Part shown: positions 21,984 to 63,591 of the stretch, in pieces | Layout: every line of letters starts with the position of its first letter | Position numbering within the stretch: the stretch's first letter is position 1 | Program-made: the position numbers and the translations under genes | Origin: Haliotis rufescens | Lineage: Eukaryota | DNA: 64,000 nucleotides | Reading direction: 5' to 3' | NCBI RefSeq assembly: GCF_023055435.1 | Contig: NW_025963868.1 | Coordinates: 19,902,001 to 19,966,000 of the forward strand | Notes under the pieces: generated by a model | The model's input: the letters and a program-made list of their open reading frames with translations, nothing else | Told to the model about the DNA's origin: nothing | The model's database searches: none

Positions 21984-23438
21984 GTCGCTATATGGTTGAA
22001 AGAAGCTTCCTCACTGATAAATTTTTAGGAGACAAAAGTGACATTTTTAGCAATATCGGGAAAAAATGCCGAAAATGCCACAGAATAAAAAATCACAGTA
22101 GTATTCGTCGTAAAGGTGTTGCGTCTGGGTATGAGTGGGTTCCTTAAATACCTGGACGGTGTGATAGTCCAGTAGTTAAAGCGTTGCCTGGCCATGGTGT
22201 TTGAGGCTTAGTGATGGTGTAGCGGTATAGCGGGGATATTGTGACAGTAGCGTATGTACGCTGTTCTTACACTTCTACCGTGCACACACAAAAATAATAT
22301 CACCCCATGGGGCGTGGATATAGGTGAAAGCATTTTTCAGTAATTGTCACTGGGCATTATGACGTTTGCTTCATGCTGATTGGATAGTTCGCATCAATTG
22401 TTCCATTGTTTTCATCGTTTGCGAAGAGGTTCACGACAACGTGCGTCACTGAACACATTGTCGCATGTCACTGAGGATGGCGTCATCATAGCACAACATC
22501 ATTCACTCGGGGCAGATAACCCGTGAATCCTCGTAGCACGGAGGTTATCCTCCTATTGTTTCATAAGGTCCTCGCTGATTAGCCCTACTGGAGTAGCATC
22601 ATAATCATCATCATCCCGTTAGACAGCTTCTGAAAATATATTATTAGTATATAATACTTATAATGTATTGTACAACTTTGTGAGGTGAATCTTTGTAGCC
22701 AGTCGTCTTCCTGTTGATTCTAGGATAGAGGTGTTACTCATGCTATCAATCGCTATTCAGAGTCAGCTATGTAAAGACTGCTGGATATATGCAATATCTC
22801 GCATATTATTATGGTATCAATGCACATATTCATAAACATATATTAGAAAGTAAGAACAGTTTACCACACATGCAGAGATTACAATTAAAGGGAGAGAACC
22901 TGTTATCGTCGGAGCTTCAGGGAGTACCGACTCAGTCAAAGTGACTATTCTACACACACTATCCCAGACCAGCATCGAACACATTGCGTGCGCTGGACCT
23001 CGGGTTGTCCATCCACAAGATGGGGTGTGGTTCTAACGAGTACAGGCCATGGACATACCGCTTAAAAGGAATTTCCGTTTATAAATACAGGAACGATATG
23101 TGATCTGAAATTTGCTTTGAACAGTATTTCAGGTCTATCACTGCACGTCCAAATCAAACCGATGCGTTGGTGAATGACACAAGCACGGGTTAGACACAGA
23201 TCGTTGACAATATATGATTCCAACCCAAATGGTTCACTAACTCGTGTATTCTGCCTGTTTTGGAACTAAAATGTGAAAAATATCAAAATTAAAATTTACC
23301 TCTATCTTGGTGTTCCTCATCCTAGTGTTATTTTGTCTTCGGTTTCATCACCTGGACGTGCACATCTGACAACAGCAAGTAAAAGTGTAGACAAGTCGTA
23401 ATATAGTTTACCGACAGCTAGCATTACATGCAAATCTA

Positions 23439-23737
23439 AGAGTGAGTGAGTGAGTGAGTGAGTGAGTGAGTTGGGTTTAACGCCGCTTTTAACAGTATTC
23501 CAGTTATATCGCGGCGTGTCAGCTTAATGTGGGGGGAAAGCCCGAAGTGATGCAGGTCTCAGACGTTTACCACTTCGGTGAAACCCACGAGCACGGGTAT
23601 GGTGCTGACAAACCTAGAAACATAATCGGGGAGAACCGGGATTCAAACCCACAATCATAGGTTTCTGGCGTGCCCAAAGGACGCAACTCTGCACCGAAAA
23701 TCGCGCCGCCTTAGACAACAGGGCCACCCATGCCCCC
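23439..23737 (-). mobile_element. SINE family 3 (tRNA-like head with long A-B box spacing, (TCAC)n tail)
   Basis: GGTGGCCCTGTTGTCTAAGGCG...GTGGGTTTGAATCCC; further copies at ~46143-46390, 47767-48014, 51698-51905 and a degenerate one at 29476-29680. Confidence 0.8.
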
Positions 23738-24154
23738 TGCACTTGTAAGATCTGCAAGTGAACTAAACATATTTTTTAGGTGTAACGGTATTAAAATTCA
23801 ATAACAAGGTATGATATTAAAGACCACACTGCACAGCAGACATCATTTGAACTTTCGTAGAAAAGCATGAGTACTCAAATGATTACATTTCATATTTTTC
23901 GAAATATATTTTTTAAAATCTAACAGCTGGCGGAATGCTTACTCATTTATGTGGAGAATTGAATCCACTTACTTATGCATCATGGCTCGACTAGCTAATT
24001 ATGTACAACTCGGGGTTGGGGTGGGATCGGGGGAAACTCTGTACCTTGCGCCACTGGTTCCCTGTACTGTGTGGGGGCATCCGCTGATAAACATTCTGAT
24101 GACACTGTGTATAGCATGTTGTCCCGCATGGCTGAAACATAATATATCATAATT

Positions 24155-24294
24155 ATGAGTAGTAGAAGTTGTTGTAGTTTTAGCATTAGTTGCAGTAGTA
24201 GTTGCAGCAGCAGTAGTAGTAGTTGCAGTAGCAGAAGTAGTAGCAGTAGCTGTAGCAGTGGAAGTAGTAGCATCGCTATTATTATTATCATTAT
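24155..24294. repeat. Imperfect (GTA/GCA)n plus (ATT)n microsatellite
   Basis: Directly visible. Confidence 0.9.
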
Positions 24295-25007
24295 GTAGGC
24301 CGTATCATCACAAACTAGTCATTCGTTGACATTCTCTGTAATGAAACCTGTATATAACAAACGCACGTTTTAGCAGGTGTCCTCCCATTAGTTAGACGTC
24401 CCAATAGTTAGACAGCTTATAACAACACTTTAAACGGTTGAGTGCACACTAATCCTTATGCTTGTTACCTCAGACTTTAAAATGGAATAGTCCAGATAAG
24501 ATCTTACAAACAAAGCAAAGCAGCTTTAAATAGATACTTTAATATTATACTTAACATTTAATGACACTTTACATTTGATAAATTTTGTACAGTTTGTAAG
24601 AACACTTTGTGCCAGTTTTTGGTAATGTACACTTTACATTTAATAACTTTTACAGTTTATTTATCCCAGACGAAGCAAGTGTGCTAGGTGAGCCGCAAGT
24701 CACACACTTTGCATTATTAAACAAGAATTTCTTCATTGCCTCACGCCGAGCGACAATACTCCTGTGGCCTGTAAACAATTAAGTCCAGACAAGACACTCC
24801 AGCGTGTTTACTGATTTTGTTGAAGCTATGGTGGATGCTGGGTTGCTGCGGACTTCAGTCAACCAGCAGGGCCATCGACTGTTTTAGCGTCATCATAATT
24901 ACTGTATTATTTCCTGTAAAAATATCGCACATGTCAACAACTTTAAACAAATGCCAAAGAACCTGACTGATGAAAAGGTTGTAAATGAACACACTCTGTT
25001 CTTATTG

Positions 25008-25008
<1 letters not shown>

Positions 25009-25058
<50 letters not shown>
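25009..25058. repeat. (TA)n microsatellite
   Basis: Directly visible. Confidence 0.95.
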
Positions 25059-25869: not shown

Positions 25870-26160
25870 TCAATTTCAGGCCATGTAACATTTTTTTGCA
25901 ATGTGATGACAAGCCACATGGTACCTTATAACCATGTGGTGAGACGTCTTCTATATCAGGCCATGTAACATTACAATGTGATGACAAAGCACATCTTACA
26001 TTATTACGATGTGATGAGAGGTCTTCAATATATGATGACAAAGCACATTTTACCTTATAACCATGTGGTGAGAGGTCTTCAATATATGATGACAAACACA
26101 TTTTACCTTATAACCATGTGGTGAGAGGTCTTCAATATATGATGACAAACACATTTTACA
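25870..26160. repeat. ~50-bp imperfect tandem repeat
   Basis: gatgacaaagcacattttaccttataaccatgtggtgagaggtcttcaatatat repeats ~5 times. Confidence 0.85.
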
Positions 26161-26425
26161 TGAGTAGATAATCTAAACTCAACTCCTTCAACTGATCATA
26201 CAGTAAGACAATTAAGCTACTCCATAGTTTACATAGTTAATCTCATGCCTATTGAACCTGTGCTGAGAGTAAGGTAATTTAGGTTAATTAAACGAAATTA
26301 TAACATATATACTCCCTAAACTGTGAGTATCCCTATGGGATATAACCTTTTAGTATGTACATTTTTAACATGGTTATGTAATACTCATGAAATACACAAA
26401 GAAACGTTACTTTATCATGTCTTAC

Positions 26426-26539
26426 CTCCTGATGTGCGACGCCTTCTTCTTATAAATAGAACGACGACTACACCGACGAGGACAACAACTGCACAGGCAG
26501 ACCCTGCAGCTATGTAAACAACAGTCCTGCCACCCAAGT
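26426..26539 (-). CDS. Gene A exon 4: transmembrane helix and basic stop-transfer
   Basis: ctgttcag|AC...GGA G|gtaag; (D)LGGRTVVYIAAGSACAVVVLVGVVVVLFIRRRRRTSG; phase 1-1. Confidence 0.85.
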
Positions 26540-26651
26540 CTGAACAGAGGAGAAATTACAATATCTTTATAAGGCAGTTATCGTCATGCCGCTGTCACCA
26601 TAATGATGATTGTGAATAGTAAATCATGAAGCGCTGGTCTCCGCGTCACGG

Positions 26652-27180
26652 CATCTTCCCGAGGCAAGGGCGTAAACTGACTAGAAAAGTCCAGTCCCCA
26701 CCCTTGCCGAAATAGGCTGCAATTTCCAGGCTCGATCGTAGCGCCACCAGTGGCTATTACAAGTTATGCCCCTTCTATGTCCCTCCTATTGACCAATCAG
26801 ATTCCATCACTCATATCACTTGCAGTTGCTTCCAACAAAATGGCGGCACCCAATCAAAACGATCTGATCGATAATCAAGATCCATATTTGTAATATGACG
26901 GGTCTTACGCCGCGAAGTGTATCAAATCACGTGAGCACCTTGATTAAAAACATGAAATGCAAAATATCTGTCGACGCCCAGTTGGCGGTACACACGGTTT
27001 GCAAATCCTGCAAACGACCGAAATCTGCACGTTGAAATCCATGTAGTTCCCTACGCGATTTTTGGACTATGCATAGACTCGTTAGTCCAGCCAAAATGTA
27101 ACTCCGGAATACCAGCCTAGTTCGGCAAGGGTGGAAACTGGACTTTCGTAGTCAGTTAACGCCCTTGCCTCGGGAAGATG
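26652..27180. mobile_element. 529-bp MITE with ~68-bp TIRs and 8-bp TSD (hAT/P-type)
   Basis: CATCTTCCCGAGGCAAGGGCG...CGCCCTTGCCTCGGGAAGATG; flanked by CGTCACGG / CGTAACGG. Confidence 0.85.
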
Positions 27181-27183
27181 CGT

Positions 27184-29237
27184 AACGGCGGCTGATAAGT
27201 GTGCACTCCAGTTGTATTCTGAACTCCATTGGATGAATACAACCAAACTGACATTTAGGCATAAGAAGGTTTTAAATTCACCCTGCCATCTCATCCTACC
27301 GGATACCCATTCACTGATGGCTTGAGGCAAATGTCGAAGACACATTATGATTATAACGCCGTCAACAAAATAATGATGATGAATGTGTTATTGTGATGCG
27401 CTGGACTCCACGTCACGGACTAGTGTACACTCCAATTGTATTCTGAACCCCCTGAGGAGAATACAACCATAGTGACTACAAGGCACAATGCGGTTTCGTC
27501 ATGCCATGTAACGATTCGATGCTGGGTGAACTTAAGCATATGTCTAACTTGAAAGACACCGTGTCTCGGTATGGGGTAGGATGGACGTCTTGTGTGAAAT
27601 ATCAGGAACCAGCCTTACTTGCTCAACGCCGCACTCAGCAATATTCCAACTAAATGACGGCGTTCTGTGAATACACGAGTCTGGATCAGACAATCCAGTG
27701 ATTGACACCACATGAGCATCGATCTACGCAATTGGGATACGATGACATGCATCTACCAAGTCAGTGAGCCTGACCACCCGATCCCGTTAGTCGCCTCTTA
27801 CGGCAAGAATGGGTTGCTGAAGATAAATTCTAACCTGAATCTTCACAGATGGTCAACCTTACTGGTTATAAAGTTTGACGGTGCTGATTGTGTGTCCAGG
27901 GGACCAATGGTGTGATGAGATATCAACTTGCTATACAGAGTTGCCTCCCTTGTTCTTCACTTTTGTTTTTTCTTCCACATTGACACATTGACACGCACTG
28001 ATACAACCGAATACTGCTCACAGCAGAGATAATTAACTCACTCACACAAACTCAAAATAAACAAAACAACGGCATTTATTATTATTTTGTTGTTGTTAAT
28101 GTAAATGTTTTTAGTCATCATTCGTCTTATTTACCGTTTTATGAATTACAATTTAGACCAATAATAGTACATCGCCATTTCGACCATTTCCCCAATTCTG
28201 ATTATGTTTCAACGGCGGCTGATAAGTGTGCACTCCAGTTGTATTCTGAACTCCATTGGATGAATACAACCAAACTGACATTTAGGCATAAGAAGGTTTT
28301 AAATTCACCCTGCCATCTCATCATACCGGATACCCATTCACTGATGGCTTGAGGCAAATGTCGAAGACACATTATGATTATAACGCCGTCAACAAAATAA
28401 TGATGATGAATGTGTTATTGTGATGCGCTGGACTCCACGTCACGGACTAGTGTACACTCCAATTGTATTCTGAACCCCCTGAGGAGAATACAACCATAGT
28501 GACTACAAGGCACAATGCGGTTTCGTCATGCCATGTAACGATTCGATGCTGGGTGAACTTAAGCATATGTCTAACTTGAAAGACACCGTGTCTCGGTATG
28601 GGGTAGGATGGACGTCTTGTGTGAAATATCAGGAACCAGCCTTACTTGCTCAACGCCGCACTCAGCAATATTCCAACTAAATGACGGCGTTCTGTGAATA
28701 CACGAGTCTGGATCAGACAATCCAGTGATTGACACCACATGAGCATCGATCTACGCAATTGGGATACGATGACATGCATCTACCAAGTCAGTGAGCCTGA
28801 CCACCCGATCCCGTTAGTCGCCTCTTACGGCAAGAATGGGTTGCTGAAGATAAATTCTAACCTGAATCTTCACAGATGGTCAACCTTACTGGTTATAAAG
28901 TTTGACGGTGCTGATTGTGTGTCCAGGGGACCAATGGTGTGATGAGATATCAACTTGCTATACAGAGTTGCCTCCCTTGTTCTTCACTTTTGTTTTTTCT
29001 TCCACATTGACACATTGACACGCACTGATACAACCGAATACTGCTCACAGCAGAGATAATTAACTCACTCACACAAACTCAAAATAAACAAAACAACGGC
29101 ATTTATTATTATTTTGTTGTTGTTAATGTAAATGTTTTTAGTCATCATTCGTCTTATTTACCGTTTTATGAATTACAATTTAGACCAATAATAGTACATC
29201 GCCATTTCGACCATTTCCCCAATTCTGATTATGTTTC
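27184..29237. repeat. Near-identical 1027-bp tandem duplication (27184-28210, 28211-29237), each unit with a minus-strand SINE family 1 copy
   Basis: Identical ORFs at 27712 and 28739; only one substitution seen by eye. Confidence 0.95.
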
Positions 29238-29380
29238 ATACTTTTTCCTTCAGCTGTGTGTCACACTTCTGAACGAAAATGTTTCATGCGATAAGTAATT
29301 ATTCATAGAAGAATGTCTTTATTTCAGTGGGACATGAGATATCAACCGTCATACAAATTTTACATAAGTTTTGTATTTAC

Positions 29381-29446
29381 CGTTATCTTTAGCTTCGCGG
29401 TTAGGAACTCGTGACAGATCAGCATACCTTCCAAGCCTTGCAGTAA
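29381..29446 (-). CDS. Gene A exon 3: short stalk
   Basis: ctgttccag|TT...AAC G|gtaaat; 66 nt, phase 1-1, open: (L)TARLGRYADLSRVPNREAKDN. Confidence 0.6.
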
Positions 29447-30139
29447 CTGGAACAGATCAGTGTAAGTTCATTGCAGTGAGTGTGTAAGTTGGGTTTAACG
29501 CCGCTTTAAACATGGCTCAGTTCTGCCACGGTGTTAGTTTAACGTGGAGAGCCCCAAATGACGGAGGTTCGAGACCTTAACGCACGTTCATGGGTATAGT
29601 GCTGACAAACTAGGGCCATGATCAGGGCGATACTGGGATTCGAACCCATGATCTTTAAGTTCTATCACGTGTTACGGGCGCAACACCAAATTCTGATAAC
29701 AGTATTGGAACAAAAATATTAAGACTGACAAGCCAAGGCTCCTGACACCTAAAATCACCAACATATTATCAAAGGGGTGAGATTGATATCAAATGAAATA
29801 GTTTGCTTCGTTTAAGTAAAAAGATCAATTTAACCACAAAGTGCATTACAAGAATGTATGAAAACAAACTACACGTTGAACACCCAGCATCCCTATACGT
29901 TCCGCATTCCTGCTACATATATCAGCGGCCGGTAAACAACCCAACCAGTGCTAGCCAAACCAGTGATTCATATTATGTGCAACACTGTACGTCGTACGAT
30001 GACACGCAATAAACCAAGTCATCTGGACTGACCAGCCTATCCACTTTCTGTCGCCTTTTACGACCAGAAACAGAAACAGTGCTGAGAGCCTCCTAGTCTA
30101 ACCTGTGTCCCAAACGGGTTCAGATCTGTCAACAAACTC

Positions 30140-30371
30140 TTTGTTTGTTAGTTGTTTAACGCCGCTATTACAGATAAATGACGGCGGTCTGTAAATAATC
30201 GAGTCTGGAATAGGCAATCCAGTAATTGACATCATGAGCATCGATTCACGCAATTTGGATACAATGGCATGCATCAACCATGTCAGCGAGTCTGACCACT
30301 AGATCCCGTTAGTCACCTCCTACCACAAGCAGCGGTTACTGAAGACCTATTCTAACCCGGGTATTCACGGT
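30140..30371 (-). mobile_element. SINE family 1
   Basis: Reverse complement of consensus. Confidence 0.85.
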
Positions 30372-30991
30372 ATCAACAAACACTGAATACCTATATTCAA
30401 CTGGTATCCAGTTAATGGAAATTCAATGTATGTATAATCCTAAACAATATACACACTGCGTAAATTGACTTGTGAACTGAAAACACATATTTTCTTTTCT
30501 TCATTTTCTAAGAAAGAAGACTGTGGATAATGTATACTGGTGGAAAAGCATCAACGCCAAATTAAACGTAGCAAAAGGAATGCGGAAAGTGCACGCAGAA
30601 GGCACACATGCATGTTGGCCACGATGGTTCCCGTGTCTTTGTCAATACATGACAATAGCGCACAAAGGCAAATGATGTAAGCCAGTGTTTTTCAAGGTTA
30701 TGTAATTTGTACAAGCAAACTGGTTATCTGGAAATGCGGCAATGTCGTGGAATACGTTATGTCAAAAGGGTTCATTATTGTGGAAGTACCCTTTACGGGC
30801 GGGGAAGATTGAACGTCAGTTTGAATTCCATCCATGGAGATCAATTTGGTAAATTACCGATTACGCTATTTGAATAGAGGCAGTGTCTCACTTACACACA
30901 CAACACTTATCACAACGCATAGACCTACCCGTCATACCTTGGAGCAAAGCCCTTCTTTAACAAACAACAACAACAACAACACTTGACTCAC

Positions 30992-31321
30992 GTAATGTAA
31001 TGTGGTTGCTTGTCTCGCTCTTCACAGTATCCTTACACCACCACACAGAGCCTCTGTCAATGGTAGCGTTGATCATGAGAGTCACATTGTGTTGGAGGAC
31101 ATTACAGCTGACACTGACACGCCCTGACAAGTACTTGCTATAGATGTAAGGGTTGGATATGGCCGCTTTACTGAAAGTGGACAGAGACTGCGTAGTACGG
31201 AAGATGACGTTATCATCCCTGAACCAGTATCGGTTCACTTCGCCCCAGCTACTGCTGCAGATCAGAGTGATGGCTTGTCCGTCGGTTGCTGTTGGTGGAG
31301 AACTTGTCAGTACGAGAGAAC
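30992..31321 (-). CDS. Gene A exon 2: V-set-like immunoglobulin domain
   Basis: ttttgtgtag|GT...TTA C|gtgagt; 330 nt, phase 1-1; GQAITLIC...YWFR...YLSGRVSVS...VTLMI...DRGSVWWC with 73 residues between the Cys. Confidence 0.85.
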
Positions 31322-31929
31322 CTACACAAAATGATATTAGAAACAAAAACTCTTGAAACATATTTTAGATAAATGATAATCATGGTTGTACCTACAAAAA
31401 TCATTTTGGTAGGCCTACTGCAATATACGTATAATAAGGATCATCATTTTATCATTTAAGCTGGTGGCGGTTGGGTAACCTTGTGGTTAAAACATTCGCT
31501 CGTTTGGCTGAAGGCCCGTGTTTGATGTCCCTAATAAGTACAATGTGTGCAGACACTTTTTGGTGTCCCTTGCAGTGATATTTTTTTAATAGTACTAAAA
31601 TCGGCTTAAAACTATATCCACTCACTAATTTAAGCTGACCTAATTATATTGTTTCTCGCTTCTGTTGGTACTATTTGAATTATGAATGTGCTCTTTAACA
31701 TCGTCGATAATGTGGTGTTTAAAATGTTCGCTCGTCACGTCGAAGACACGGGTTCGATTCCCCACATCTGGTGTTAAACATGTTAGACATTGAGGGAAAT
31801 ACATACATTCGCACACGGATATATAGATATTATGATGCTTACTGACAGTTAAATGTCTTATTCATGTGTGGTTTAAATGTTAAATAATGTACTACTAATT
31901 ACACGGTTCATGATTTTCATATAGGAACA

Positions 31930-32092
31930 CAAGCGTTTAAGAGTCCCGCTTGTATAGGATAAAATGTGAATTTGGCGCGATATGCATAGCACAATAAATG
32001 CACATTCATCCACTTCTGTTGTTTTGACAGTATTCTAGAAATAGATTTTAGTCATCGACTCAAAAGAGACAAGCGGGACTCTTAAACTCTTG
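31930..32092. mobile_element. Small MITE-like element with ~24-bp inverted termini
   Basis: caagcgtttaagagtcccgcttgt...acaagcgggactcttaaactcttg; no clear TSD. Confidence 0.65.
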
Positions 32093-32319
32093 CACATGTC
32101 ATAAATATGTATCTGTGACAAGTGAACATTAGTGCATTCTGTATTCGTTTTGAAAAATAATGCTGTCAATGAAAATTAATTTTCTTAACCTACTGAAGAA
32201 GAGAAATACTTCACACTTTGCACACTTAAAGGCTTCAAGGAATGTCTTGTTATTGTAACTGTCTACAATATGGCACAACTGTATAACGCACTAGGTATTA
32301 ATATAGAGGAAAGGCTTAC

Positions 32320-32389
32320 CTTCGAGTTTTATGAATTGAAGCAGGAACGCCAGCACGAACACGGCACTCTTCAACAATCTGCACCCCAT
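32320..32389 (-). CDS. Gene A exon 1: signal peptide
   Basis: MGCRLLKSAVFVLAFLLQFIKLE G|gtaag; phase 1 matches the Ig exon. Confidence 0.85.
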
Positions 32390-33909
32390 ACTTTCCAGTA
32401 TCAACATATGAATTTACTTACCTAATATAACAACTTTGATCTATACATTAATTACGAACGTGTGACATTCACCAACATTTGCGGGATAAAGACAAACAAC
32501 ACTTGCCACACCTGAGCGTCTCATCGCCCAATGAACTGACAGACGTGTGTACACGTAACAGTGAGATACGCATATTTCTGTAAATTCCCGTGTCCCCACA
32601 TCTAACTAGGACTTGGCTGTGTGGAAAAGCTATCAGTGTGTACACATCTTTGTATAGCTATATATTGAAAGGTCCAGAGCCACGAATGTTGATGACTTGA
32701 TGACATTGTTTTTCCTACTAGGAAGTTATGTTGGGTTTAATCTAGATTCGCCTTAATTCTACAAAAATGACATTTTTTTACCCGAGTAAGTGGCTGTTGT
32801 TATATGACCAATCAGTGAATAAGAAGAAAAACTGTTAAGCAACTGATCATAAATATTATACCGCATGTCGGCAAAGAAATGGTGCTTCTGTCAAATACAC
32901 GCCACATACAAATATAAACTGACATCCAACAATTAGGTCTGTTTATTCGCCAAAAATCATACGATCATATAGGTATGAATACGATTGTGTACACTGGATT
33001 GTTTGTTAAAACAAAATATTTATCCAGTGCGGTGTGTTTCAGTATTAGGACCATGACTAGAAATAAAAGTATAATCTATTAGCTGATCAGTTAAAGTTGT
33101 TAAACGCTGCAGTTTGATACATCCCAACTGTACACCTACTGTGAATACTATTTAGTGAGTCTGGACCAGACAGACCAGTGACCAAAGGCAAACACCTGTA
33201 CCATCGGGCTACAAGGTGTCGCAGTCAGCCAAGGTACAGAGCCTGACCACCCAACCCCCATAAAAACCCGGCAACATTGAGTGGGGTTAAATGTAACGTC
33301 GTTTAACAAATCTTAGGTACATTATGTTCATGAAAAACTATTTGGGGTGTTATAGTGTCCATGTTTTCGGCTATTGTAACATTTGACCCTGAACTAACCA
33401 GCTTGTCTGGAGGTGGGCCAACTTGTCACAGAAACGCATCACTTTCAGGAGCAGTCTGATATTCTCTGTCCTCTTTCTCTATGGAGGACGGCTCCAGCGG
33501 CAGCAATAACTGCAATTTAACATTTACGCCTTCTCCGCCAACGACTTGTGCAGCCAGTAGAACAAACTCACTCCGTCAGTCTTGTTGTTTGTGAGATCTA
33601 ATATAACCTATGGTATGTGGTATTTATCATATTTGTGAGCAGATATGCATACAAATCCACCTTTGATCAATAAGCACTATAGACGCGACAACGATATTGA
33701 CACCGGGTTATTATTTAAGCATAAACGTCAACACCAGTGTCAAGATTATCCCAAGAAACAGATTCCATTTAGCTCACAATGCAAAATGGCTGTGACGATT
33801 ATGTGAATGGATCACTGAAAATCAGTGGTGGCACCCGGGGTTCGCGGTAAGCATGTCCTGCCACTCGCCATTCACACAGGGAGTATAACAAGTAAGTGTA
33901 AACCATCCA

Positions 33910-36254: not shown

Positions 36255-37758
36255 TACTGAGAGGCACAAATAACGCATACTCAAATTTAAGTGTCAATAA
36301 TTTTTTACTGAAATGAAATCTACAAATGACAATCAAAACAAATGACTAATTAAAGATTACACTGATGAATTTCATGAACAGTTAGTGTGTGACAAAGAAT
36401 TAATGTCTATGAAAATGACGTCAAAGGCGAGTGGTGTCAATAACGAGTATGTCCTCCTTGTGCAGCAATGCACGCTTGAAGCCGGCGAGGCATTGAGAGA
36501 CACAGTCGACGAATTGCAGCCTGAGGAATACGTCTCCAATGATGCAGAAGAGCTTGAGTCAGTTGTGGAACCGTCTGTGGAGGATTTTGTTGACGTCGGA
36601 CACGGCGGCCAAGTTCATCCCACAAATGTTCTATAGGGTTCAAATCTGGGGACCTTGAAGGTCAGTCCAACACATTAACGTTGTTCTGTTGCAAGAAGGC
36701 GTCTGTTATCCTGGCAGTGTGAGGCCTTGCATTGTCATGTCGAAAGACATGGCGACGTAAACCACGTTGAGTCAGTAATGGCAGCAGAACAGGCTGTAGA
36801 ACGTTTACGATGTAACGTCTGGCATTAAGGTTCCCCTGAATAACAACAAGATCCGAGCGGAAATTTGCATTGATTTCTCCCAAAACCATAACACCTCCAC
36901 CTCCAAACCGATCACGTTCAATAACACATGGTTGTGTAAATCGTTCATGTTGGCGTCGGTATACACGTAAACGTCCATCAGGGTAGCTGACTGTGAAACG
37001 TGATTCATCAGAAAAAAACAACTTGTCACCAATCTCTACCACCGAGATGACCTCCACCAGCTGCCCATCGCTGCCGTGCTAGCCTGTTTGCCTGAGTCAA
37101 GATTTGTCCACGGTAGGGTCGTCGACCCCTCAAATTCCTGGCAGCAAGACGACGACGCACTGTACGGTCACTGATGTGTCTTCCACGGAGACCAATGGTT
37201 GCATATGCCGTTGACCTGGCAGACGTGAAGCGATTTCTGAGGTGGCTGTTAACGATTTGACGATCTTGTCTCTGTGACGTCACAGGCGGTGCACCTGGTC
37301 GAGGACGGTCCCTTACGCTGCCTGTGGTTCTGAACCGCTCATGTAATCTCGATATTATCGTTTGATGGCAATGGAAATGAACAGCAACTTGTTCTTGGGT
37401 ACGACCAGCATTTAACATCCCCATGCTTCATTACGCTGATCTTGCGTTAACCGTGGCATTGTGTAGGCAAGTGACGGCAAACTGTCATGTTTTGCATTTA
37501 TAGGGTCTACCTTTGAGGTTTGCACGTGTATCATGCCTTTCACAAAATGTGCATCGATAGCAGCATTCCCAGTGGTGTGTTGCGTTTTGGTGATTGGCTT
37601 CGTTTCCAGAAACAGTTTTTGTTTGCAACCCATATGACATGTTTACAGTAATAACCAACAATGGACAGTGTCAACAAGGTAAAATGTAAACGGACCTCAT
37701 ATGTTCTTAAAAAAATTATATCTTAAAATTGAGTATGCGTTTCTAATGCCTCTCAGTA
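36255..37758 (-). mobile_element. Full-length Tc1-like transposon 2 (transposase 37459-36437, several frameshifts)
   Basis: TIRs TACTGAGAGGCA...AACGCATACTCAA at both ends, TA TSD; FSDESRF, HDNARPH, DLNPIEHLW, GGHTRY*. Confidence 0.95.
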
Positions 37759-41260: not shown

Positions 41261-42766
41261 TACTCTTCAAAAAAAGAAACGTGACATAGATGTAAAACCC
41301 CTTTTTGCCAAATATCTAAAATAATTACATTAAATGAGAACCAAATAAGTCAAACAGAAAGATGATGTGTCTATAATTCGCGAAAACACATGCAAAGCAC
41401 ATAAATGTAGCGTTTGGGGATCAATTTTACAGCTTCACCCAAAAGCAACCGCCTGTAAAAAACGTGCAGCACAGGATCATGCATTTAGGCATGCAGGCAC
41501 CCCTGCTGAATGGGTATTAAAATCCACATAAACGGCTGTTCATACAGTCCTTATAACGGCAGTAGAGGCGGTGACAGAATGCCAAGACTGAATGCAGCTC
41601 AACGGAACAACGCAATTGGGAGATTACAAGCTGGAGCAACTCAGCAAGAAGTGGCCAGGCACTTTGGCGTATTCAGACAGACAATCTCTGCACTGTGGAC
41701 CCAATACAACAACACCAACAGAGTTGACGACAGACCAAGGTCAGGAAGACCAAGGGTGACAACCCAAGCACAAGATCGATACATCCGGCTGCGACACCTC
41801 CGAGACCGCACTACCACAGCTACGTCTACAACCACACAGGTCCCTGGGGTACGCAGAATATCAGATCAAACGGTACGCAACAGACTGAGGGAGGCTGGAC
41901 TTTTTGCACGAAGACCTGTTCGACGTCATGTATTGACCCCACGTCATCTGGCGGACCGTCTCCTTTGGTGCCAACAGAGGGTTAGATGGGCACGTGCAAG
42001 GTGGAGAAATGTACTGTTTACTGACGTTTCCTACTCACACGTGCTGATGGGCGCGCACGTGTCTACAGACGTCGGGGTGAACGTTACGCCCCCAACTGTG
42101 TGCAGCAGGTTGTCCCATTTGGCGGCGGGAGTGTCATGGTATGGGCCGGAATTCATCACGGTGGTAGGACGCCTCTCGTGCATGTGGCAGGTGCATTAAC
42201 AGGTGTGCGTTACAGAGACTTGATCCTACAGCCTTACGTTCTTCCTTACGTTCAAGGCGGACAGTTCCAGCAGGACAACGCTCGACCGCATATTGCACGT
42301 GTTTGTCAGGACTTCTTACAGCACAACAACATCCAGACATTACCTTGGCCAGCCCTGTCACCAGATTTGTCCCCGATTGAGCATCTGTGGGACGAGTTGG
42401 ATCGACGCGTTCGCAGAAGGAATCCACCGCCCAAAACACTTCCGGCGCTTCTTGATGCACTTCAGCATGAATGGCAGCACATCCAACAGCGTGTTAATGA
42501 CAACTTGATTGCATCTATGGGTCGTCGGTGTCAAGAGGTGATTGATGCACGTGGTGGGCACAACCAATACTGACATTATCTGTACCCCTGTGCCATTAAC
42601 TGTATCGTGTACGTGTGTCTGTCTAGGTGACACGATTAATGTTTTGAACATTGTGTACATTGATCTTCAAACAGTGTTTCAATTATGGTTTATGTGTCCT
42701 ATTTCGAAACAATCGCATTATAATACATTTTGAAAGTCAGTGTCAAGTTTCTTTTTTTGAAGAGTA
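41261..42766 (+). mobile_element. Full-length Tc1 (DD34E) transposon 3 (transposase 41579-42573, one frameshift)
   Basis: 26-bp TIRs TACTCTTCAAAAAAAGAAAC(G/T)TGACA, TA TSD; VLFTD; QQDNARPH...SPIE with 34 residues between D and E. Confidence 0.96.
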
Positions 42767-42929: not shown

Positions 42930-42995
42930 CGTCTTTATGGCAATGAATCTTCTCCACATCGTCAAAGCCGACGTAACATACATTGTCGACCATCA
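42930..42995 (-). CDS. Gene B tail exon (second VDNxxY type)
   Basis: gtttttag|TG ATG...GAC G|gtaaag; (V)MVDNVCYVGFDDVEKIHCHKD; phase 1-1. Confidence 0.7.
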
Positions 42996-43699
42996 CTAAA
43001 AACAAAGATATTTTGTAATCCAACGTTGAAATGCAACGATAAATGAAGCACTTTTAGGCTTGTTAGAATGACCAAAAAAAACACACTGTGGACTGTGGTC
43101 AGAGGACTGACTATTTGAAAGATTTCAAAAGTATGGTAAACCTAGGTTAAAAACAGCAAAATAATGTGTGTTTTCTTAACTAGTCTAGCTTTCAAACAAC
43201 AAACATTCGTTTAGCTACTGGACACTTTCCTGTTGCAATTGATGTGATCCAAAGATAAAAAGAAAAATAGAGAAATCGTGTTAATAGATGATAGAATCAT
43301 GATGTCATAGCATCAGAATCATAACACACAGCAACATTTTGTAAGGATTAGTTCTATCTCACTAGTATTATTAACCTGTATTTGATGTCAAATATGTTCA
43401 ATTGATTTTAAACTTTCACTTCGGTATGTTGCAGCATGAACAACAGCTGCATGTGAATAAACGTACCAGAAAGACAACTGGATTGTGTTTCCCTGTATTA
43501 TTCCTGAATACACCATGAATAAATGCTGATATTAAAAATCAAAACAGGAAATAACATTAAAGTAATGCTATCTACTATTGCAGATGTAAAATGAATACGG
43601 AAACGCAAAAGTGAGAAACACAAATTAATTTAAAGAAAGTACCAAAAAGTAAACTAACCAAGCGTTTCATCCTCGCTCTCTGTATGGCCATCTTGAGTG

Positions 43700-44423
43700 C
43701 TACTGAAACATTACATGTAACAATACAGCCACGTGATATTGAAACATTATACGAAACAGTACAGCCACGCGCTACCGAAACATTATACGTAACATTACAG
43801 CCATGTGTTCTTGAAACATTACATGTAACAATACAGTCATGTGCTACTGAAACATTACATGTGTCAATACGACTATGTTGCATGGAATCATTGCAGTACC
43901 ATAGAGCCACGTACTAACGGAAACATTACGTGTAACAATACAGCAATGTTATGTTGTAACATTACACGTTACAATACAGCCCTGTGCTACAGAAACATTA
44001 CACGTTACAATACAGCCCTGTGCTACAGAAACATTACACGTTACAATACAGCCCTGTGCTACAGAGACATTACACGTTACAATACAGCCCTGTGCTACAG
44101 AAACATTACACGTTACAATACAGCCCTGTGCTACAGAAACATGACACGTTACAATACAGCCCTGTGCTACAGAAACATTACACGTTACAATACAGCCCTG
44201 TGCTACAGAAACATTACACGTTACAATACAGCCCTGTGCTACAGAAACATTACACGTTACAATACAGCCCTGTGCTACAGAAACATTACACGTTACAATA
44301 CAGCCCTGTGCTACAGAAACATTACACGTTACAATACAGCCCTGTGCTACAGAGACATTACACGTTACAATACAGCCCTGTGCTACAGTAACATTACACG
44401 TAACTATACAGCCACGTGCTACT
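43700..44423. repeat. 36-bp minisatellite, ~19 copies, homogeneous centre and degenerate left edge
   Basis: gaaacattacacgttacaatacagccctgtgctaca. Confidence 0.97.
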
Positions 44424-45625
44424 TTTATCTAACTATATATAGACCAGTTCACGAAAGATTTTTACATTTTATAAATAAATTGTTTATACACGTGCTCCTC
44501 TGAGGGAGATATATCTATACTACATCCTGATTTCAAATGAGAGTTGTTGTTTTCAGTTCATTTAAATCAGATTCTATATGTTCTCATTTACACAATGACC
44601 ACCCGATCCCGTTAGTCGACTCTTACGACAAGCATAGTCGCCTTTTAGGGCAAACATGGGTTGCTGAAGACCTATTCTAACCAGGATCTTCACGGGTCAC
44701 GTGCTACTGTAACATTTAACGTAACAATACAACCATGTGTTCACTGTCAATCCCTGGATTGTCTGGTTTATTATTTACAGACCACCGACACAAAACTAGA
44801 CTGGTGGGTTAAACAACAAACAGACGATGTAATCTTACTGTTAGCAAGGCCTCATAATCAGATGTGTTCCTATATCGATCGGGATCGGGTGGTTTGGCTC
44901 GCCGACTTGGTTAATGCACGTCATCGTATCCCAATTGCGTGGATCTATGCTCATGATGTCAATCACTGGAATGTCTGGTCCAGGCTCGATTATTCACAGA
45001 CCGCCGTCATATAGCTGGAATATTGCTGAGTGCGGCGTTAAATAACAAACAAACAAATCCTATATCGATACCCCATACTGATTTCATGTGCGCATAGTTG
45101 TTTACAGTTCATTAAAATGTATACGTTCTCATACATACAATGTCAATTTAACACTTACATCTCTTCTTCCAGGCGCTCTGAGTCTGTAGATGTCATCAAC
45201 ACCTGAATTGTGGAGGTCCCTGCTGGTTACAATATATCAGGATGAAAACTACAAGTAAATGTATTGCATAATACAGCTTTGTTGTGAAATGTATATATAT
45301 ATCAACATATATACCAATCAAATATAGGACTAAACACAGTGGTGTGTCTAAGTGTTTCTGTGGGATCAGACAATGGTAATATTTCCATGATCAACTCCGG
45401 TGAAACAAAAAAGAAGCTTCTTGACAGCATTCATGTCCCTTCAGCCGCGTGCATATACTCCTGGAAAAAGACTAAGCACCGTGTATTATGTATTTCCTTG
45501 TAAAAACTTTATTGTAACAAATCATATCCTGTGTCAATATTCTGACGAAACAAAGAAAAGTGAAACTTGGACTTAAGTAAGTGAACAAATTGCATAAGGG
45601 TTCCTTGTATACGAGTGTATCTGAC

Positions 45626-45694
45626 CTTCTGTTTGTCCAAGATCCTGCTCTTCCTCCTCCAGAAACCCGATGTAACAGACGTTGTCCACCATAA
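45626..45694 (-). CDS. Gene B duplicated VDNVCY exon (copy 1); companion 47-nt exon at 46059-46105
   Basis: ctgtttcag|TT ATG GTG GAC AAC GTC TGT TAC...GAA G|gtcaga. Confidence 0.5.
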
Positions 45695-47249
45695 CTGAAA
45701 CAGTATTTATTATTATGTAATGTTGTTTCAGTCATTAGTCAGAAAACAGAGTATAATGTTATCTACTGTTTGATGGTTATATAGAAGTGTGTCGAGGGCT
45801 TTGTTTCATATTGTATATGTTACTTAAAAAAGGAACATGTCAAAATTATATTTTTCTCATTCTGTCCTGTATTTGTATACACTCACATATTAGTACGCAT
45901 GCACTAAAGTACACAGGCACACATCTGTATACATATTGCATATTATAAATGTGTTTGCATATCATTTCAATACGGCAGTAAAATATTAAAAATGTATCGG
46001 TTAATACAATGTTTCAAGTGAAAATCAATGACATCAATAGAAAAAATCAAAGACTTACCCAAGCTATCGTCGATGTGACTTTCTGTATGCTCAATCTCCT
46101 CAGACCTGCAACATTCGTCAATGCTGAAGTTATTCGTTTTCCCTAAGGCGCCGAGATTCGCTGTGCAGAGTTGCGTCCCTTGGGCACGCCAGAAACCTAT
46201 GATTGTGGGTTCGAATTCCAGTTCGCCCCGATTATGTTTCTAGGTGTGTCAGCACCATACCCGTGCTCGTGGGTTTTACCGAAGTGGTAAACATCTGAGA
46301 CCTGCATCAATTCGGCCTTCTTCCCACATTAAGCTGACACGCCGTGATGTAACTGGAATACTGTTAAAAGCGGCGTTAAACCGTACTCACAATTCGTTTT
46401 CCCTTTGTGATTACTCCTACAAAGATGCATTGGCTCCATTCAAATAGGTACATGTAATTGCAAAGATGCACCCGAGGCTTACACAATTTGATGAATGGTT
46501 AATCTTTACTGAGAGCAGACCTTTTAGACTAGTATATGTGTTCAAAGCCTGGGCCGTTGTTGTTGCTGTTGTTTAACGCCGCACTCAGCAATGTTCCAGC
46601 TATGTACTCGATTATTCACAGACCGCCGTCATATAGCTGGAATATTGCTGAGTGCGGCGTTAAACAACAAACAAACAAATCCTATATCGATACTCCATAC
46701 TGATTTCATGTGCGCATAGTTGTTTACAGTTCATTAAAATGTATACGTTCTCATACATACAATGTCAATTTAACACTTACATCTCTTCTTCCAGGCGCTC
46801 TGAGTCTGTAGATGTCATCAACACCTGAATTGTGGAGGTCCCTGCTGGTTACAATATATCAGGATAAAAAAACTACAAGTAAATGTATTGCATAATACAG
46901 CTTTGTTGTGAAATGTATACATATATCAACATATATACCAATCAGATATAGGACTAAACACAGTGGTGTGTCTAAGTGTTTCTGTGGGATCAGACAATGG
47001 TAATATTTCCATGATCAACTCCGGTGAAACAAAAAAGAAGCTTCTTGACAGCATTCATGTCCCTTCAGCCGCGTGCATATACTCCTGGAAAAAGACTAAG
47101 CACCGTGTATTATGTATTTCCTTGTAAAAACTTTATTGTAACAAATCATATCCTGTGTCAATATTCTGACGAAACAAAGAAAAGTGAAACTTGGACTTAA
47201 GTAAGTGAACAAATTGCATAAGGGTTCCTTGTATACGAGTGTATCTGAC

Positions 47250-47318
47250 CTACTGTTTGTCCAAGATCCTGCTCTTCCTCCTCCAGAAACCCGATGTAAC
47301 AGACGTTGTCCACCATAA
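47250..47318 (-). CDS. Gene B duplicated VDNVCY exon (copy 2); companion 47-nt exon at 47683-47729
   Basis: As copy 1 with one substitution (E>V). Confidence 0.5.
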   Translation of the reverse strand, partial: LWWTTSVTSGFWRRKSRILDKQ

Positions 47319-48706
47319 CTGAAACAGTATTTATTATTATGTAATGTTGTTTCAGTCATTAGTCAGAAAACAGAGTATAATGTTATCTACTGTTTGATGG
47401 TTATATAGAAGTGTGTCGAGGGCTTTGTTTCATATTGTATATGTTACTTAAAAAAGGAACATGTCAAAATTATATTTTTCTCATTCTGTCCTGTATTTGT
47501 ATACACTCACATATTAGTACGCATGCACTAAAGTACACAGGCACACATCTGTATACATATTGCATATTATAAATGTGTTTGCATATCATTTCAATACGGC
47601 AGTAAAATATTAAAAATGTATCGGTTAATACAATGTTTCAAGTGAAAATCAATGACATCAATAGAAAAAATCAAAGACTTACCCAAGCTATCGTCGATGT
47701 GACTTTCTGTATGCTCAATCTCCTCAGACCTGCAACATTCGTCAATGCTGAAGTTATTCGTTTTCCCTAAGGCGCCGAGATTCGCTGTGCAGAGTTGCGT
47801 CCCTTGGGCACGCCAGAAACCTATGATTGTGGGTTCGAATTCCAGTTCGCCCCGATTATGTTTCTAGGTGTGTCAGCACCATACCCGTGCTCGTGGGTTT
47901 TACCGAAGTGGTAAACATCTGAGACCTGCATCAATTCGGCCTTCTTCCCACATTAAGCTGACACGCCGTGATGTAACTGGAATACTGTTAAAAGCGGCGT
48001 TAAACCGTACTCACAATTCGTTTTCCCTTTGTGATTACTCCTACAAAGATGCATTGGCTCCATTCAAATAGGTACATGTAATTGCAAAGATGCACCCGAG
48101 GCTTACACAATTTGATGAATGGTTAATCTTTACTGAGAGCAGACCTTTTAGACTAGTATATGTGTTCAAAGCCTGGGCCGTTGTTGTTGCTGTTGTTTAA
48201 CGCCGCACTCAGCAATGTTCCAGCTATGTACTCGATTATTCACAGACCGCCGTCATATAGCTGGAATATTGCTGAGTGCGGCGTTAAACAACAAACAAAC
48301 AAATCCTATATCGATACTCCATACTGATTTCATGTGCGCATAGTTGTTTACAGTTCATTAAAATGTATACGTTCTCATACATACAATGTCAATTTAACAC
48401 TTACATCTCTTCTTCCAGGCGCTCTGAGTCTGTAGATGTCATCAACACCTGAATTGTGGAGGTCCCTGCTGGTTACAATATATCAGGATAAAAAAACTAC
48501 AAGTAAATGTATTGCATAATACAGCTTTGTTGTGAAATGTATACATATATCAACATATATACCAATCAGATATAGGACTAAACACAGTGGTGTGTCTAAG
48601 TGTTTCTGTGGGATCAGACAATGGTAATATTTCCATGATCAACTCCGGTGAAACAAAAAAGAAGCTTCTTGACAGCATTCATGTCCCTTTAGCCGCGTGC
48701 ATATAC

Positions 48707-51120: not shown

Positions 51121-51171
51121 AAGTAAGTGAACAAATTGCATAAGGGTTCCTTGTATACGAGGGTATCTGAC

Positions 51172-51240
51172 CTTCCGTTTGTCCAAGATCCTGCTCTTCC
51201 TCCTCCAGAAACCCGATGTAACAGACGTTGTCCACCATCA
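51172..51240 (-). CDS. Gene B tail exon (VDNVCY)
   Basis: (V)MVDNVCYIGFLEEEEQDLGQTE; 69 nt, phase 1-1. Confidence 0.65.
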
Positions 51241-63445: not shown

Positions 63446-63591
63446 TAGTCTCATAATGCACTTTTAAAATCTGACATTATGATAATATGAACTTACCTAT
63501 CGTTATGCCATTACTTATGTCACGTGCATCCATATTGGCGCATTTCTACTCTAAATTCCTGTCGATGCTGGCATTTATCCTCAGATCCACA

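What the first reader, a model, noticed from the sequence alone, without database searches (positions are those of the whole stretch)
26426..32389. Gene A: four phase-1 exons assemble into an intact single V-like-Ig membrane receptor invisible in the ORF track
Exons 32389-32320, 31321-30992, 29446-29381 and 26539-26426 all have canonical splice sites and join without stops. The Ig domain has V-set spacing (73 residues between Cys), an atypical DRGSVWWC F-strand, an extra Cys and two N-x-T sequons (NVT, NAT). The total is roughly 210 aa if it ends at 24855.
Basis: partly seen in the sequence, partly recalled or inferred. Interest (0 to 1): 0.75.

Follow-up and report, generated by a model that had tools for sequence, protein, structure and literature searches.

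The report
Abalone single V-type Ig membrane protein
This is a real, transcribed red abalone gene for a small cell-surface protein with one antibody-like domain; public annotation already lists it as uncharacterized, and it belongs to a large receptor family found so far only in abalones.

Summary
The four minus-strand exons are real. Their coordinates, GT-AG sites and phase 1 all hold. Contigs that lack the introns, in two runs, carry e1-e2-e3-e4 joined at exactly these borders with 0 mismatches.

The Ig exon is predicted to fold as a V-type domain (pLDDT 88.7). It matches antibody, TCR and CD8 V domains at Z 11-12.

The gene is RefSeq XP_046374840.2, "uncharacterized protein LOC124147988" of Haliotis rufescens, 240 aa. 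That model has six coding exons. After the TM exon come e5 (24131-24045) and e6 (23365-23328), which are homologous to paralogue tails. The proposed 24913-24855 exon is not in the model.

The "extra" Cys is the surviving half of a second, family-specific disulfide.

The own genome holds at least 107 related Ig exons. All 29 homologues whose source names I saw are from Haliotis. None of 10 members tested reaches a Pfam Ig threshold. Five literature searches found no description of the family.

Gene A is a short-stalk, short-tail member with orthologues in three abalone species. This scan has already noted clusters of abalone-only Ig receptors on other DNA of this genome (s1-816321, s1-811082). 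Function is untested.

The parts
32320..32407 (-). Coding exon 1: signal-peptide exon. The RefSeq start ATG is at 32407, the first in-frame ATG after a TAA. The exon ends in phase 1 with donor GT at 32319-32318.
   Evidence: P0009 residues 1-30 match 32407-32318 at 100%. X1, X2 and X6 contigs cover 32318-32404/32409 and run about 107-113 nt further upstream.
30992..31321 (-). Coding exon 2: the whole V-type Ig domain (109 full codons). It holds C21, W32, C72, C95, the NVT and NAT sequons and the DRGSVWWC F strand. Phase 1-1.
   Evidence: contigs of 4 of 4 runs lie on exactly 30992-31319.
29381..29446 (-). Coding exon 3: short stalk of 21 full codons that is not mucin-like. Phase 1-1. A high-copy repeat abuts its acceptor side (29447-29609).
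   Evidence: 66 nt lie between e2 and e4 in X1 record 1 and X2 record 7, and the depth in bin 29210-29409 equals 29 covered bases. X6 record 26 joins e2 to 29446.
26426..26539 (-). Coding exon 4: end of the stalk, the transmembrane helix and an RRRRR stop-transfer. Phase 1-1.
   Evidence: KD 2.88 over 19 residues; contigs of 4 of 4 runs end or are joined at exactly 26426 and 26539, except X6 record 21, which retains 26540-26624.
24045..24131 (-). Coding exon 5: cytoplasmic tail module 1 (28 full codons, with ...DNMLYTVSSE... and ...TQYREP...). AG at 24133-24132, GT at 24044-24043, phase 1-1.
   Evidence: It is part of the public protein P0009. It is homologous to the tails of P0010, P0006 and P0028 and to the H. 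asinina orthologue (E 3e-4). It was not checked by reads.
23328..23365 (-). Coding part of exon 6: tail module 2 (DVHVQVMKPKTK, stop TAA at 23330-23328). It is the counterpart of the family's DVYxQVxKPK motif, with His in place of Tyr.
   Evidence: (100% match to P0009 residues 229-240). It was not checked by reads.
24855..24913 (-). It is an open reading with a plausible acceptor, but it is absent from the public model and has no family homology. It is either an unused site or an untested minor isoform.
   Evidence: No hit here from 155 family proteins at E<=1e-3.
28951..29380 (-). Part of intron 3 that some transcript contigs retain. Reading through gives 10 more codons and then a stop, which would be a TM-less soluble form if translated.
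   Evidence: X6 record 26: e1-e2-e3 runs on to 28951; X5 record 19 covers 28910-29404..

Best explanation
Gene A is a functional, transcribed six-exon gene of the red abalone, RefSeq LOC124147988. It encodes a protein of 234-240 aa.

The protein is a type I membrane glycoprotein. It has an N-terminal signal peptide, one V-type immunoglobulin domain with two N-glycan sequons, a short stalk that is not mucin-like, one transmembrane helix closed by five arginines, and a 49-residue cytoplasmic tail.

It belongs to a large family seen so far only in Haliotis. That family is built from phase-1 exon modules in the order signal, Ig, stalk, TM, tail exons. Most members carry a Ser/Thr-rich mucin stalk, a second intradomain disulfide and long Tyr-rich tails.

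Gene A is a trimmed lineage of the family that is conserved across species. It kept the V domain almost unchanged but has lost three things: the mucin stalk, the partner of Cys72, and, in this species, the Tyr of the DVYxxV tail motif.

Inferred mechanism, not shown: the V domain binds an extracellular or cell-surface ligand. With no canonical ITIM, ITSM or ITAM in the tail, the protein would signal weakly, or act as a co-receptor, adhesion or decoy-type partner of the long-tailed members.
For: Transcription and splicing:
- X1 record 1 and X2 record 7 join e1, e2, a 66-nt piece and e4 with 0-1 mismatch. Contigs of two other organisms' runs (X5, X6) cover the same exons.
- only one 100% copy of the Ig exon exists in the 1.33-Gb assembly. 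A retrocopy therefore does not explain the intron-less contigs.

Identity:
- P0009 is XP_046374840.2 and holds all four reader exons plus e5 and e6.

Conservation:
- H. cracherodii has a 95% identical orthologue and H. asinina a 61% identical one, with the same stop position.
- Between red and black abalone, by eye on A2, 1 of 109 Ig-exon residues differs against 7 of 49 tail residues.
- The three orthologues form one clade, SH-aLRT 96 (quick tree).

Fold:
- pLDDT 88.7 and pTM 0.83.
- Foldseek gave 134 PDB hits at E<=1e-3, and all those listed are V domains.
- VIA Z 12.3, rmsd 2.0 over 97 of 109 residues.
- An unbiased search of 48,161 chains gave 164 at Z>=8. The top 50 are all V-type, and CD8 alpha scores Z 11.4.

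Family:
- 107 own-genome matches at E<=0.01.
- 172 hits at E<=1e-3 among 1.84 billion representatives.
- P0006's gene has the same exon order.
- Cys72 and a C'-C'' Cys co-occur: 43 domains have both, 34 neither, 8 only C72 and 0 only C'.
Against: - No Pfam Ig model reaches its curated cut-off on the exon (best Ig_2, 22.9 bits against 27) or on 10 family proteins. Ig membership therefore rests on a predicted structure and weak profile matches (best single-domain E about 1e-3).
- The runs laid are not on record as RNA ('RNA?' is a guess).
- The e4-e5 and e5-e6 junctions were not seen in reads.
- Nothing shows that the protein is made, glycosylated or on the surface. No ligand or signalling partner is known.
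- The tail has no canonical ITIM, YxxHydrophobic or YxN motif, so 'receptor' may be the wrong word.
- Signal peptide and TM were judged by simple hydropathy, not by a trained predictor.
Confidence: 0.85

Rival explanations
1. One reading: e4 splices to 24913 and the protein ends at 24855. That would be about 212 aa with an 18-residue novel tail, a tail-less decoy form.
For: The frame is open to a TGA at 24857-24855 and the acceptor has a pyrimidine tract. An AATAAA lies near 24660. X2's contig runs 260 nt past e4, which would fit an end near there. Reads did not test the acceptor.
Against: The RefSeq model uses 24131 instead. e5 and e6 align with paralogue tails and with orthologues of two other species that stop at the same place. 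The 24913 exon has no homologue among 155 family proteins. X1's contig runs 826 nt past e4. From 24913 that would run through the e5 acceptor into e5.
Confidence: 0.08
2. Gene A is a decaying or non-functional family member that is merely transcribed. It has lost the mucin stalk, a disulfide partner and tail tyrosines.
For: Three family features are missing. Nearby family remnants do decay, for example the Ig pseudo-exon at 63480-63599 with an in-frame stop.
Against: All six exons are open. Intact orthologues of the same length exist in three Haliotis species, and all three share the 'losses', so these are old and maintained. The Ig domain differs at 1 of 109 residues between two species while the tail differs at 7 of 49. 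Transcript contigs are present in 4 of 4 runs laid.
Confidence: 0.04
3. Besides the membrane form, the gene makes a secreted single-Ig protein by retaining intron 3. This is not exclusive of the best explanation.
For: X6 record 26 joins e1-e2-e3 and runs 430 nt into intron 3. X5 record 19 covers intron 3 plus e3. Read-through adds 10 codons and then a stop. By my crude hydropathy test, 15 of 68 family proteins lack a TM.
Against: Assembled contigs cannot tell pre-mRNA from a mature isoform. Both contigs have low depth (4 and 10) and come from runs of other organisms. The two zero-mismatch contigs (X1, X2) are fully spliced.
Confidence: 0.15

Closest known systems
Abalone-only single-Ig receptor family (RefSeq 'uncharacterized protein', 'mucin-22-like', 'serine-rich adhesin for platelets-like' of Haliotis rufescens, cracherodii, asinina, rubra), for example P0010, P0006, P0004
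   Same: The Ig exon is homologous (45-52% identity, full length). The phase-1 exon order is the same: signal, Ig, stalk, TM, tail modules. The hallmarks are shared: C21, W32, W93-x-C95, QHNVT. e5 and e6 are homologous to the ...DN[VI]IY..SS... and DVYxQVxKPK tail modules.
   Different: Gene A's stalk is 33 residues with 9% Ser/Thr, against mostly 40-110 residues at 30-50%. Its tail is 49 residues with 2 Tyr, against mostly 70-175 residues with 4-8 Tyr. It has C72 without the C'-C'' partner, as do only 8 of 85 domains. It has His where the family has the Tyr of DVYxQV.
CD8 alpha (vertebrate single V domain, O-glycosylated stalk, TM, short tail)
   Same: It is the best structural match outside the antigen receptors: chicken CD8 alpha-alpha Z 11.4, rmsd 2.5 over 100 of 109 residues; mouse CD8 Z 10.4; bovine 10.3. 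The overall plan of one V domain, a stalk, a TM and a short tail is the same. The architecture of CD8 is recalled, not taken from a call.
   Different: Sequence identity is only 13-15%, and no sequence-level relation was detected. No abalone homologue of the CD8 partners is implied. Gene A has no mucin-like stalk and no stalk Cys. A shared fold does not show a shared function.
Antibody, TCR and nanobody variable domains (Pfam V-set, PF07686)
   Same: The predicted topology is a nine-strand V type with C' and C'' strands and 73 residues between the B and F cysteines. Top matches reach Z 12.3. A profile of the family gives weak V-domain hits in the PDB.
   Different: The domain scores below Pfam's cut-off (20.3 bits against 26). 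The F-strand Tyr is replaced by Trp in 82 of 85 family domains. The whole domain is in one germline exon with no sign of rearranging segments, and a family-specific second disulfide is present.
Molluscan FREPs (IgSF plus fibrinogen domain, Biomphalaria)
   Same: They are lineage-expanded molluscan IgSF proteins discussed as immune recognition molecules (PMC7588048, search listing and start of abstract only).
   Different: FREPs are secreted and carry a C-terminal fibrinogen domain. Pfam finds no fibrinogen domain in P0009, and gene A is membrane-anchored.

Membership tests
Immunoglobulin superfamily, V-type domain (Pfam V-set PF07686 / Ig clan) | Score at or above Pfam's curated gathering threshold | tested here: not met
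   Ig_2 22.9 bits (cut-off 27), Ig_3 20.8 (30), V-set 20.3 (26); 0 of 10 family proteins reach any Ig cut-off.
Immunoglobulin superfamily, V-type domain (Pfam V-set PF07686 / Ig clan) | B-strand Cys, C-strand Trp and F-strand Cys at V-type spacing | tested here: met
   C21, W32 and C95, with 73 residues between the cysteines. C21 in 85 of 85, W32 in 83 of 85 and C95 in 84 of 85 family domains.
Immunoglobulin superfamily, V-type domain (Pfam V-set PF07686 / Ig clan) | Two-sheet beta sandwich with C' and C'' strands | tested here: met
   This rests on a predicted model only; nine strands, pLDDT 88.7; all top matches are V domains, Z up to 12.3, rmsd 2.0 over 97 of 109 residues.
Immunoglobulin superfamily, V-type domain (Pfam V-set PF07686 / Ig clan) | Canonical D-x-G/A-x-Y-x-C F-strand motif (motif recalled, not from a call) | tested here: not met
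   D-R-G-S-V-W-W-C. Trp stands where Tyr is expected, and there is one extra residue. The Trp is a family hallmark (82 of 85).
Abalone-only single-Ig receptor family (unnamed) | Homologous Ig exon of full length | tested here: met
   107 own-genome matches, the best at 52% identity over positions 1-109; 60 proteins at E<=1e-10; gene A nests inside the family tree.
Abalone-only single-Ig receptor family (unnamed) | Exon order signal, Ig, stalk, TM, small tail exons | tested here: met
   for gene A. for the gene of P0006 in L017. Only one paralogue gene was mapped this way.
Abalone-only single-Ig receptor family (unnamed) | Ser/Thr-rich mucin-like stalk | tested here: not met
   9% Ser/Thr in gene A's 33-residue stalk. 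This is the lowest of the 53 TM-bearing members; the next is 11%.
Abalone-only single-Ig receptor family (unnamed) | Second disulfide pair (C'-C'' Cys with C72); a subfamily feature | tested here: not met
   43 domains have both Cys, 34 neither and 8 only C72. Gene A and its two orthologues are 3 of those 8.
ITIM / ITSM / ITAM immunoreceptors | Consensus tyrosine motif in the tail ([SIVL]xYxx[IVL]; the consensus is recalled) | tested here: not met
   0 ITIM-type, 0 Yxx[IVLM] and 0 YxN matches in gene A's 49-residue tail, which has 2 Tyr in all. ITSM and ITAM patterns were not scanned. By eye on the tail sequence, neither Tyr has the required hydrophobic residue at +3.
TIM (T-cell Ig and mucin) family | IgV with six Cys and a mucin domain (features recalled) | tested here: not met
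   three Cys in the domain; no mucin stalk in gene A. The paralogues do have the IgV + mucin + TM + Tyr-tail plan, but no TIM sequence match was seen.
FREP (fibrinogen-related proteins) | C-terminal fibrinogen domain | tested here: not met
   Pfam finds no fibrinogen family in P0009 at E<=0.01.

The most novel reading that the evidence does not exclude
Gene A is the conserved 'odd partner' of an abalone-only V-type receptor system with more than 100 members. It would be a one-per-species lineage that gave up the mucin stalk, one half of the family's second disulfide and most tail tyrosines. Its now unpaired, surface-exposed Cys72 would link it covalently to another chain, either a homodimer or a heterodimer with a long-tailed member. 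Gene A would then act as a co-receptor or decoy subunit of an invertebrate paired-receptor system that arose independently of the vertebrate ones.
Probability: 0.08. Interest if true: 0.65.

Novelty: new member of a known kind. Interest (0 to 1): 0.35.

Why it matters
The gene itself is ordinary: an already annotated, uncharacterized IgSF membrane protein.

Its value is as a clean, transcript-supported example of an abalone-restricted V-type Ig family that standard domain libraries miss and that five searches of the paper library did not find described.

Lineage-specific expansions of Ig-type surface receptors with modular tyrosine tails are how vertebrates build their NK and myeloid receptor clusters. 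An independent version in a gastropod would interest comparative immunology and abalone disease research.

Gene A is a short, well conserved member with orthologues in three species. That makes it a practical first target for expression, structure and ligand work.

Tried and rejected
- tblastn of the four exon translations against the window and against eight paralogue loci. Only the Ig exon finds relatives. Signal, stalk and TM exons are too divergent, so I could not map paralogue gene structures that way. One search, with known proteins, worked for one gene (P0006). P0010 gave only its Ig exon, because its locus was cut at 10 kb.
- Gene B as a paralogue in the window. No family Ig exon lies there. 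The window holds only a degenerate remnant at 63480-63599. Gene B's repeated exons were not followed up.
- Pfam as a test of Ig identity: sub-threshold everywhere.
- Contig lengths past e4 as a way to choose between the two 3' ends (260 nt in X2, 826 nt in X1). They are suggestive but not decisive.
- The careful maximum-likelihood tree did not finish in 300 s. The quick tree was used. It had 77 rows, the first two domains of each protein, on 111 columns, and many forks are open.
- The idea that the unpaired Cys is unique to gene A was rejected. Five other domains (P0011, P0013, P0017, P0031, P0105) share the state.
- The Thr/Ala/Ser-rich frame at 24160-24275 as a relic stalk exon is unresolved.
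- Literature. I saw search listings and the starts of abstracts only, and nothing describes this family or LOC124147988. For PMC12627906 I read three passages. It reports enrichment of Ig-domain (PF13895) genes on one abalone chromosome and calls them NCAM-like. Its Tables S24-S25 might list relatives, but supplements are closed. The claim 'not in print' rests on these five searches of the CC-licensed library alone.
- ESM Atlas look-alikes (CD7, BTLA, ICOS, CD47 and CD79-like clusters) were kept only as leads.

Full report
OBSERVATION

On the minus strand the four stated exons are present exactly as given. They are 32389-32320, 31321-30992, 29446-29381 and 26539-26426.
- Each exon is preceded by AG, except the first, and each is followed by GT.
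- Each is open in the stated frame.
- Exon lengths are 70, 330, 66 and 114 nt. Every intron therefore falls after the first base of a codon, which is phase 1.
- Exon 1 reads as a signal-like peptide with a basic start followed by a hydrophobic run.
- Exon 2 gives 109 full codons holding C21, W32, C72, C95, the NVT and NAT sequons and DRGSVWWC. There are 73 residues between C21 and C95.
- Exon 4 holds a 19-residue stretch with mean Kyte-Doolittle 2.88, followed by five Arg.

TRANSCRIPTS

One read-laying run was available, and I spent it on window 26410-32409 with four runs.
- X1 record 1 is a 1535-nt contig with 0 mismatches. It lies on 32318-32409, then directly on 30992-31319, then after exactly 66 record letters on 26426-26539. 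Those 66 letters equal the length of exon 3.
- X2 record 7 (967 nt) does the same.
- The two-base shift at the first junction (32318/31319 instead of 32320/31321) is alignment ambiguity. The intron starts GT and exon 2 starts GT.
- The bin depths match the exon borders to the base. In X1, 12.8 = 22.5 x 114/200 for exon 4, 3.26 = 22.5 x 29/200 for the part of exon 3 in its bin, and 2.02 = 22.5 x 18/200 for the end of exon 2.
- Runs of two other organisms (X5, X6) also carry contigs on exactly 30992-31319 and 26426-26539.

The runs are only guessed to be RNA. However, the assembly holds a single 100% copy of the Ig exon, at this locus and flanked by introns. Intron-less contigs are therefore best read as mRNA.

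Two low-depth contigs retain intron 3: X6 record 26 and X5 record 19. Read-through would add ten codons and a stop. I cannot tell pre-mRNA from an isoform with contigs.

WHAT THE GENE IS

I built a profile from the Ig exon and eleven own-genome paralogue exons (A1) and searched 1.84 billion representative proteins. It found only 172 proteins at E<=1e-3, 60 at E<=1e-10 and 15 at E<=1e-30.

One of them, P0009 (240 aa), is gene A itself. It is XP_046374840.2, 'uncharacterized protein LOC124147988 [Haliotis rufescens]'.
- It starts six codons further upstream, at the ATG at 32407. That is the first in-frame ATG after a TAA.
- After the TM exon it continues with two more phase-1 exons. These are e5, 24131-24045 (28 full codons), and e6, 23365-23328 (11 codons and TAA). 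Both have AG/GT sites.

None of the 155 family proteins hits it at E<=1e-3.

By contrast, e5 and e6 align with the tail modules of paralogues (A2). The paralogue motifs are ...QDNVIYTSSSD... and ...DVYTQVKKVKK.... The H. cracherodii (95% identity) and H. asinina (61%) orthologues stop at the same position.

No reads were laid on the e4-e5 and e5-e6 junctions.

FOLD

- AlphaFold2 on A1 gives mean pLDDT 88.7 and pTM 0.83, with nine strands and one short helix.
- Foldseek against the PDB gives at least 500 matches, 134 of them at E<=1e-3. All those listed are antibody, nanobody or TCR variable domains.
- Re-alignment gives Z up to 12.3, with rmsd 2.0 over 97 of 109 residues.
- A search independent of Foldseek over 48,161 representative chains gives 164 at Z>=8. 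The top 50 are all V-type. The best match outside the antigen receptors is CD8 alpha (chicken Z 11.4, mouse 10.4, bovine 10.3).
- At sequence level the signal is weak. Pfam Ig_2, Ig_3 and V-set are all below their cut-offs. None of 10 family proteins passes any Ig cut-off. The profile's single-domain PDB matches reach about E 1e-3, again to V domains.

THE FAMILY

The red abalone assembly (1.33 Gb) has 107 matches to the Ig exon at E<=0.01. That is a lower bound. Most span the full length and have open frames. The best is 52% identical. They are clustered on C90 at 13.0-13.4 Mb and on C157, C602 and C268. Gene A sits apart at C90:19.93 Mb.

All 29 homologues whose source names I saw are from Haliotis (H. 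rufescens, H. cracherodii, H. asinina, H. rubra). They comprise 6 and 11, and they reach down to E 1.2e-5. The other hits were not named, so 'abalone-only' is what was seen and is not proved.

Of 157 proteins held, 68 have at least one near-full domain. By my crude hydropathy test, 53 of these 68 have a TM segment. Stalks are mostly 40-110 residues with 30-50% Ser/Thr. Tails are mostly 70-175 residues with 4-8 Tyr.

The gene of P0006 has the same exon order: Ig, mucin stalk, TM, then several small tail exons.

Family hallmarks over 85 domains are C21 (85), W32 (83), C95 (84) and a Trp two residues before C95 (82).

THE EXTRA CYS

C72 and a Cys in the C'-C'' region co-occur across the 85 domains. 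43 have both, 34 have neither, 8 have C72 only and none has the C'-C'' Cys only. That pattern fits a second disulfide, with the caveat that related sequences are not independent.

Gene A and its two orthologues are 3 of the 8 that keep C72 alone.

WHAT IS SPECIAL ABOUT GENE A

All three orthologues share a short stalk that is not mucin-like (33 residues between domain and TM). At 9% Ser/Thr in the red and black abalone proteins, it is the lowest of the 53 TM-bearing members. They also share the missing Cys partner and a 49-residue tail.

Tail details:
- The Tyr of the DVYxQV module is His in red and black abalone but Tyr in H. asinina.
- The Tyr of the first module is present only in red abalone.
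- The one Tyr kept in all three lies in TQYxxP.
- No ITIM-type, Yxx[IVLM] or YxN match is present.

Between red and black abalone the Ig exon differs at 1 of 109 residues, against 4 in the signal region, 1 in the TM and 7 of 49 in the tail. I counted these by eye on A2. The three orthologues form a clade inside the family, SH-aLRT 96 on the quick tree.

This is the picture of a maintained gene, not a decaying one.

MECHANISM

Shown:
- Transcription and splicing of e1-e4.
- An intact frame conserved in three species.
- Family membership.
- A predicted V-type fold.

Inferred from general knowledge of type I IgSF proteins:
- Cleavage of the signal peptide near the e1/e2 junction.
- An N-glycosylated V domain on the outside.
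- A single TM pass held by the Arg run.
- A short cytoplasmic tail.

Inferred more weakly:
- Ligand binding by the V domain.
- Weak or adaptor-dependent signalling, or a co-receptor or decoy role beside the long-tailed paralogues.
- Possible covalent pairing through Cys72.

Immune and adhesive roles cannot be told apart here.

COMPARISON AND NOVELTY

By fold, and in its overall plan, gene A works like a small single-V surface protein of the CD8 alpha, CD7 or BTLA kind (the architectures are recalled). No sequence relation to any of them was detected.
- It is not a FREP, because it has no fibrinogen domain.
- It does not meet the TIM features.
- It is a member of an abalone-restricted family that Pfam does not recognise.

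Five searches of the paper library did not find the family described (listings only). One paper reports enrichment of Ig-domain genes on an abalone chromosome (PMC12627906, three passages read).

The gene is already in RefSeq as uncharacterized. This scan has already noted abalone-only Ig receptor clusters on other pieces of this genome (s1-816321, s1-811082).

I rate it a new member of a known kind, with interest 0.35.

Noticed in passing
window 63480-63599 (-): A degenerate remnant of the 3' third of a family Ig exon. It reads ...RINASIDR..., has an in-frame stop, and ends ...ITI followed by GT. Upstream it is replaced by SINE-like sequence. It is a dead family exon about 32 kb from gene A.
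   Followed up: partly
window 42973-51235 (-): Four near-identical copies of an exon-like open stretch (VMVDNVCY[IV]GF...) at 51235, 47313, 45689 and 42990. The motif resembles the family's ...DN[VI]IY... tail module, but no family Ig exon lies near it in the window.
   Followed up: partly
window 24160-24275 (-), intron 4 just upstream of e5: An imperfect trinucleotide-type repeat (TRF 24188-24267). One frame is an open Thr/Ala/Ser-rich run of about 45 aa that looks like the paralogues' mucin stalks. It lies downstream of the TM exon and is not in e5's frame. It may be a relic stalk exon or a microsatellite; this is unresolved.
   Followed up: partly
window 26610-27209, 27610-28009, 28610-29009, 29447-29609, 30010-30409, 31610-31809: Intronic repeats that collect thousands of contigs in all four runs laid, with summed depth of 1e4-1e5. 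Intron 1 holds a tRNA-like SINE, and a copy ending right at the acceptor of exon 3 has a (CACT)n-type tail that is also seen at 23440-23471.
   Followed up: no
window 25979-26159 and 25009-25058: A 53-bp tandem repeat (3.4 copies, 95% matches) and a (TA)25 run inside intron 4.
   Followed up: no
window 36839-37021 (-) and 42025-42210 (+): Two stretches match the middle of P0150, a 1008-aa protein, at 46-50% identity. The repeated ...RVYRR..ER... pattern suggests a transposase, but they were not identified.
   Followed up: no
L015 (G000:C90:19747445-19747756, about 185 kb from gene A): A neighbouring family Ig exon lacks both C72 and the F-strand Cys (...SVWQG...). It is probably a decayed copy.
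   Followed up: no
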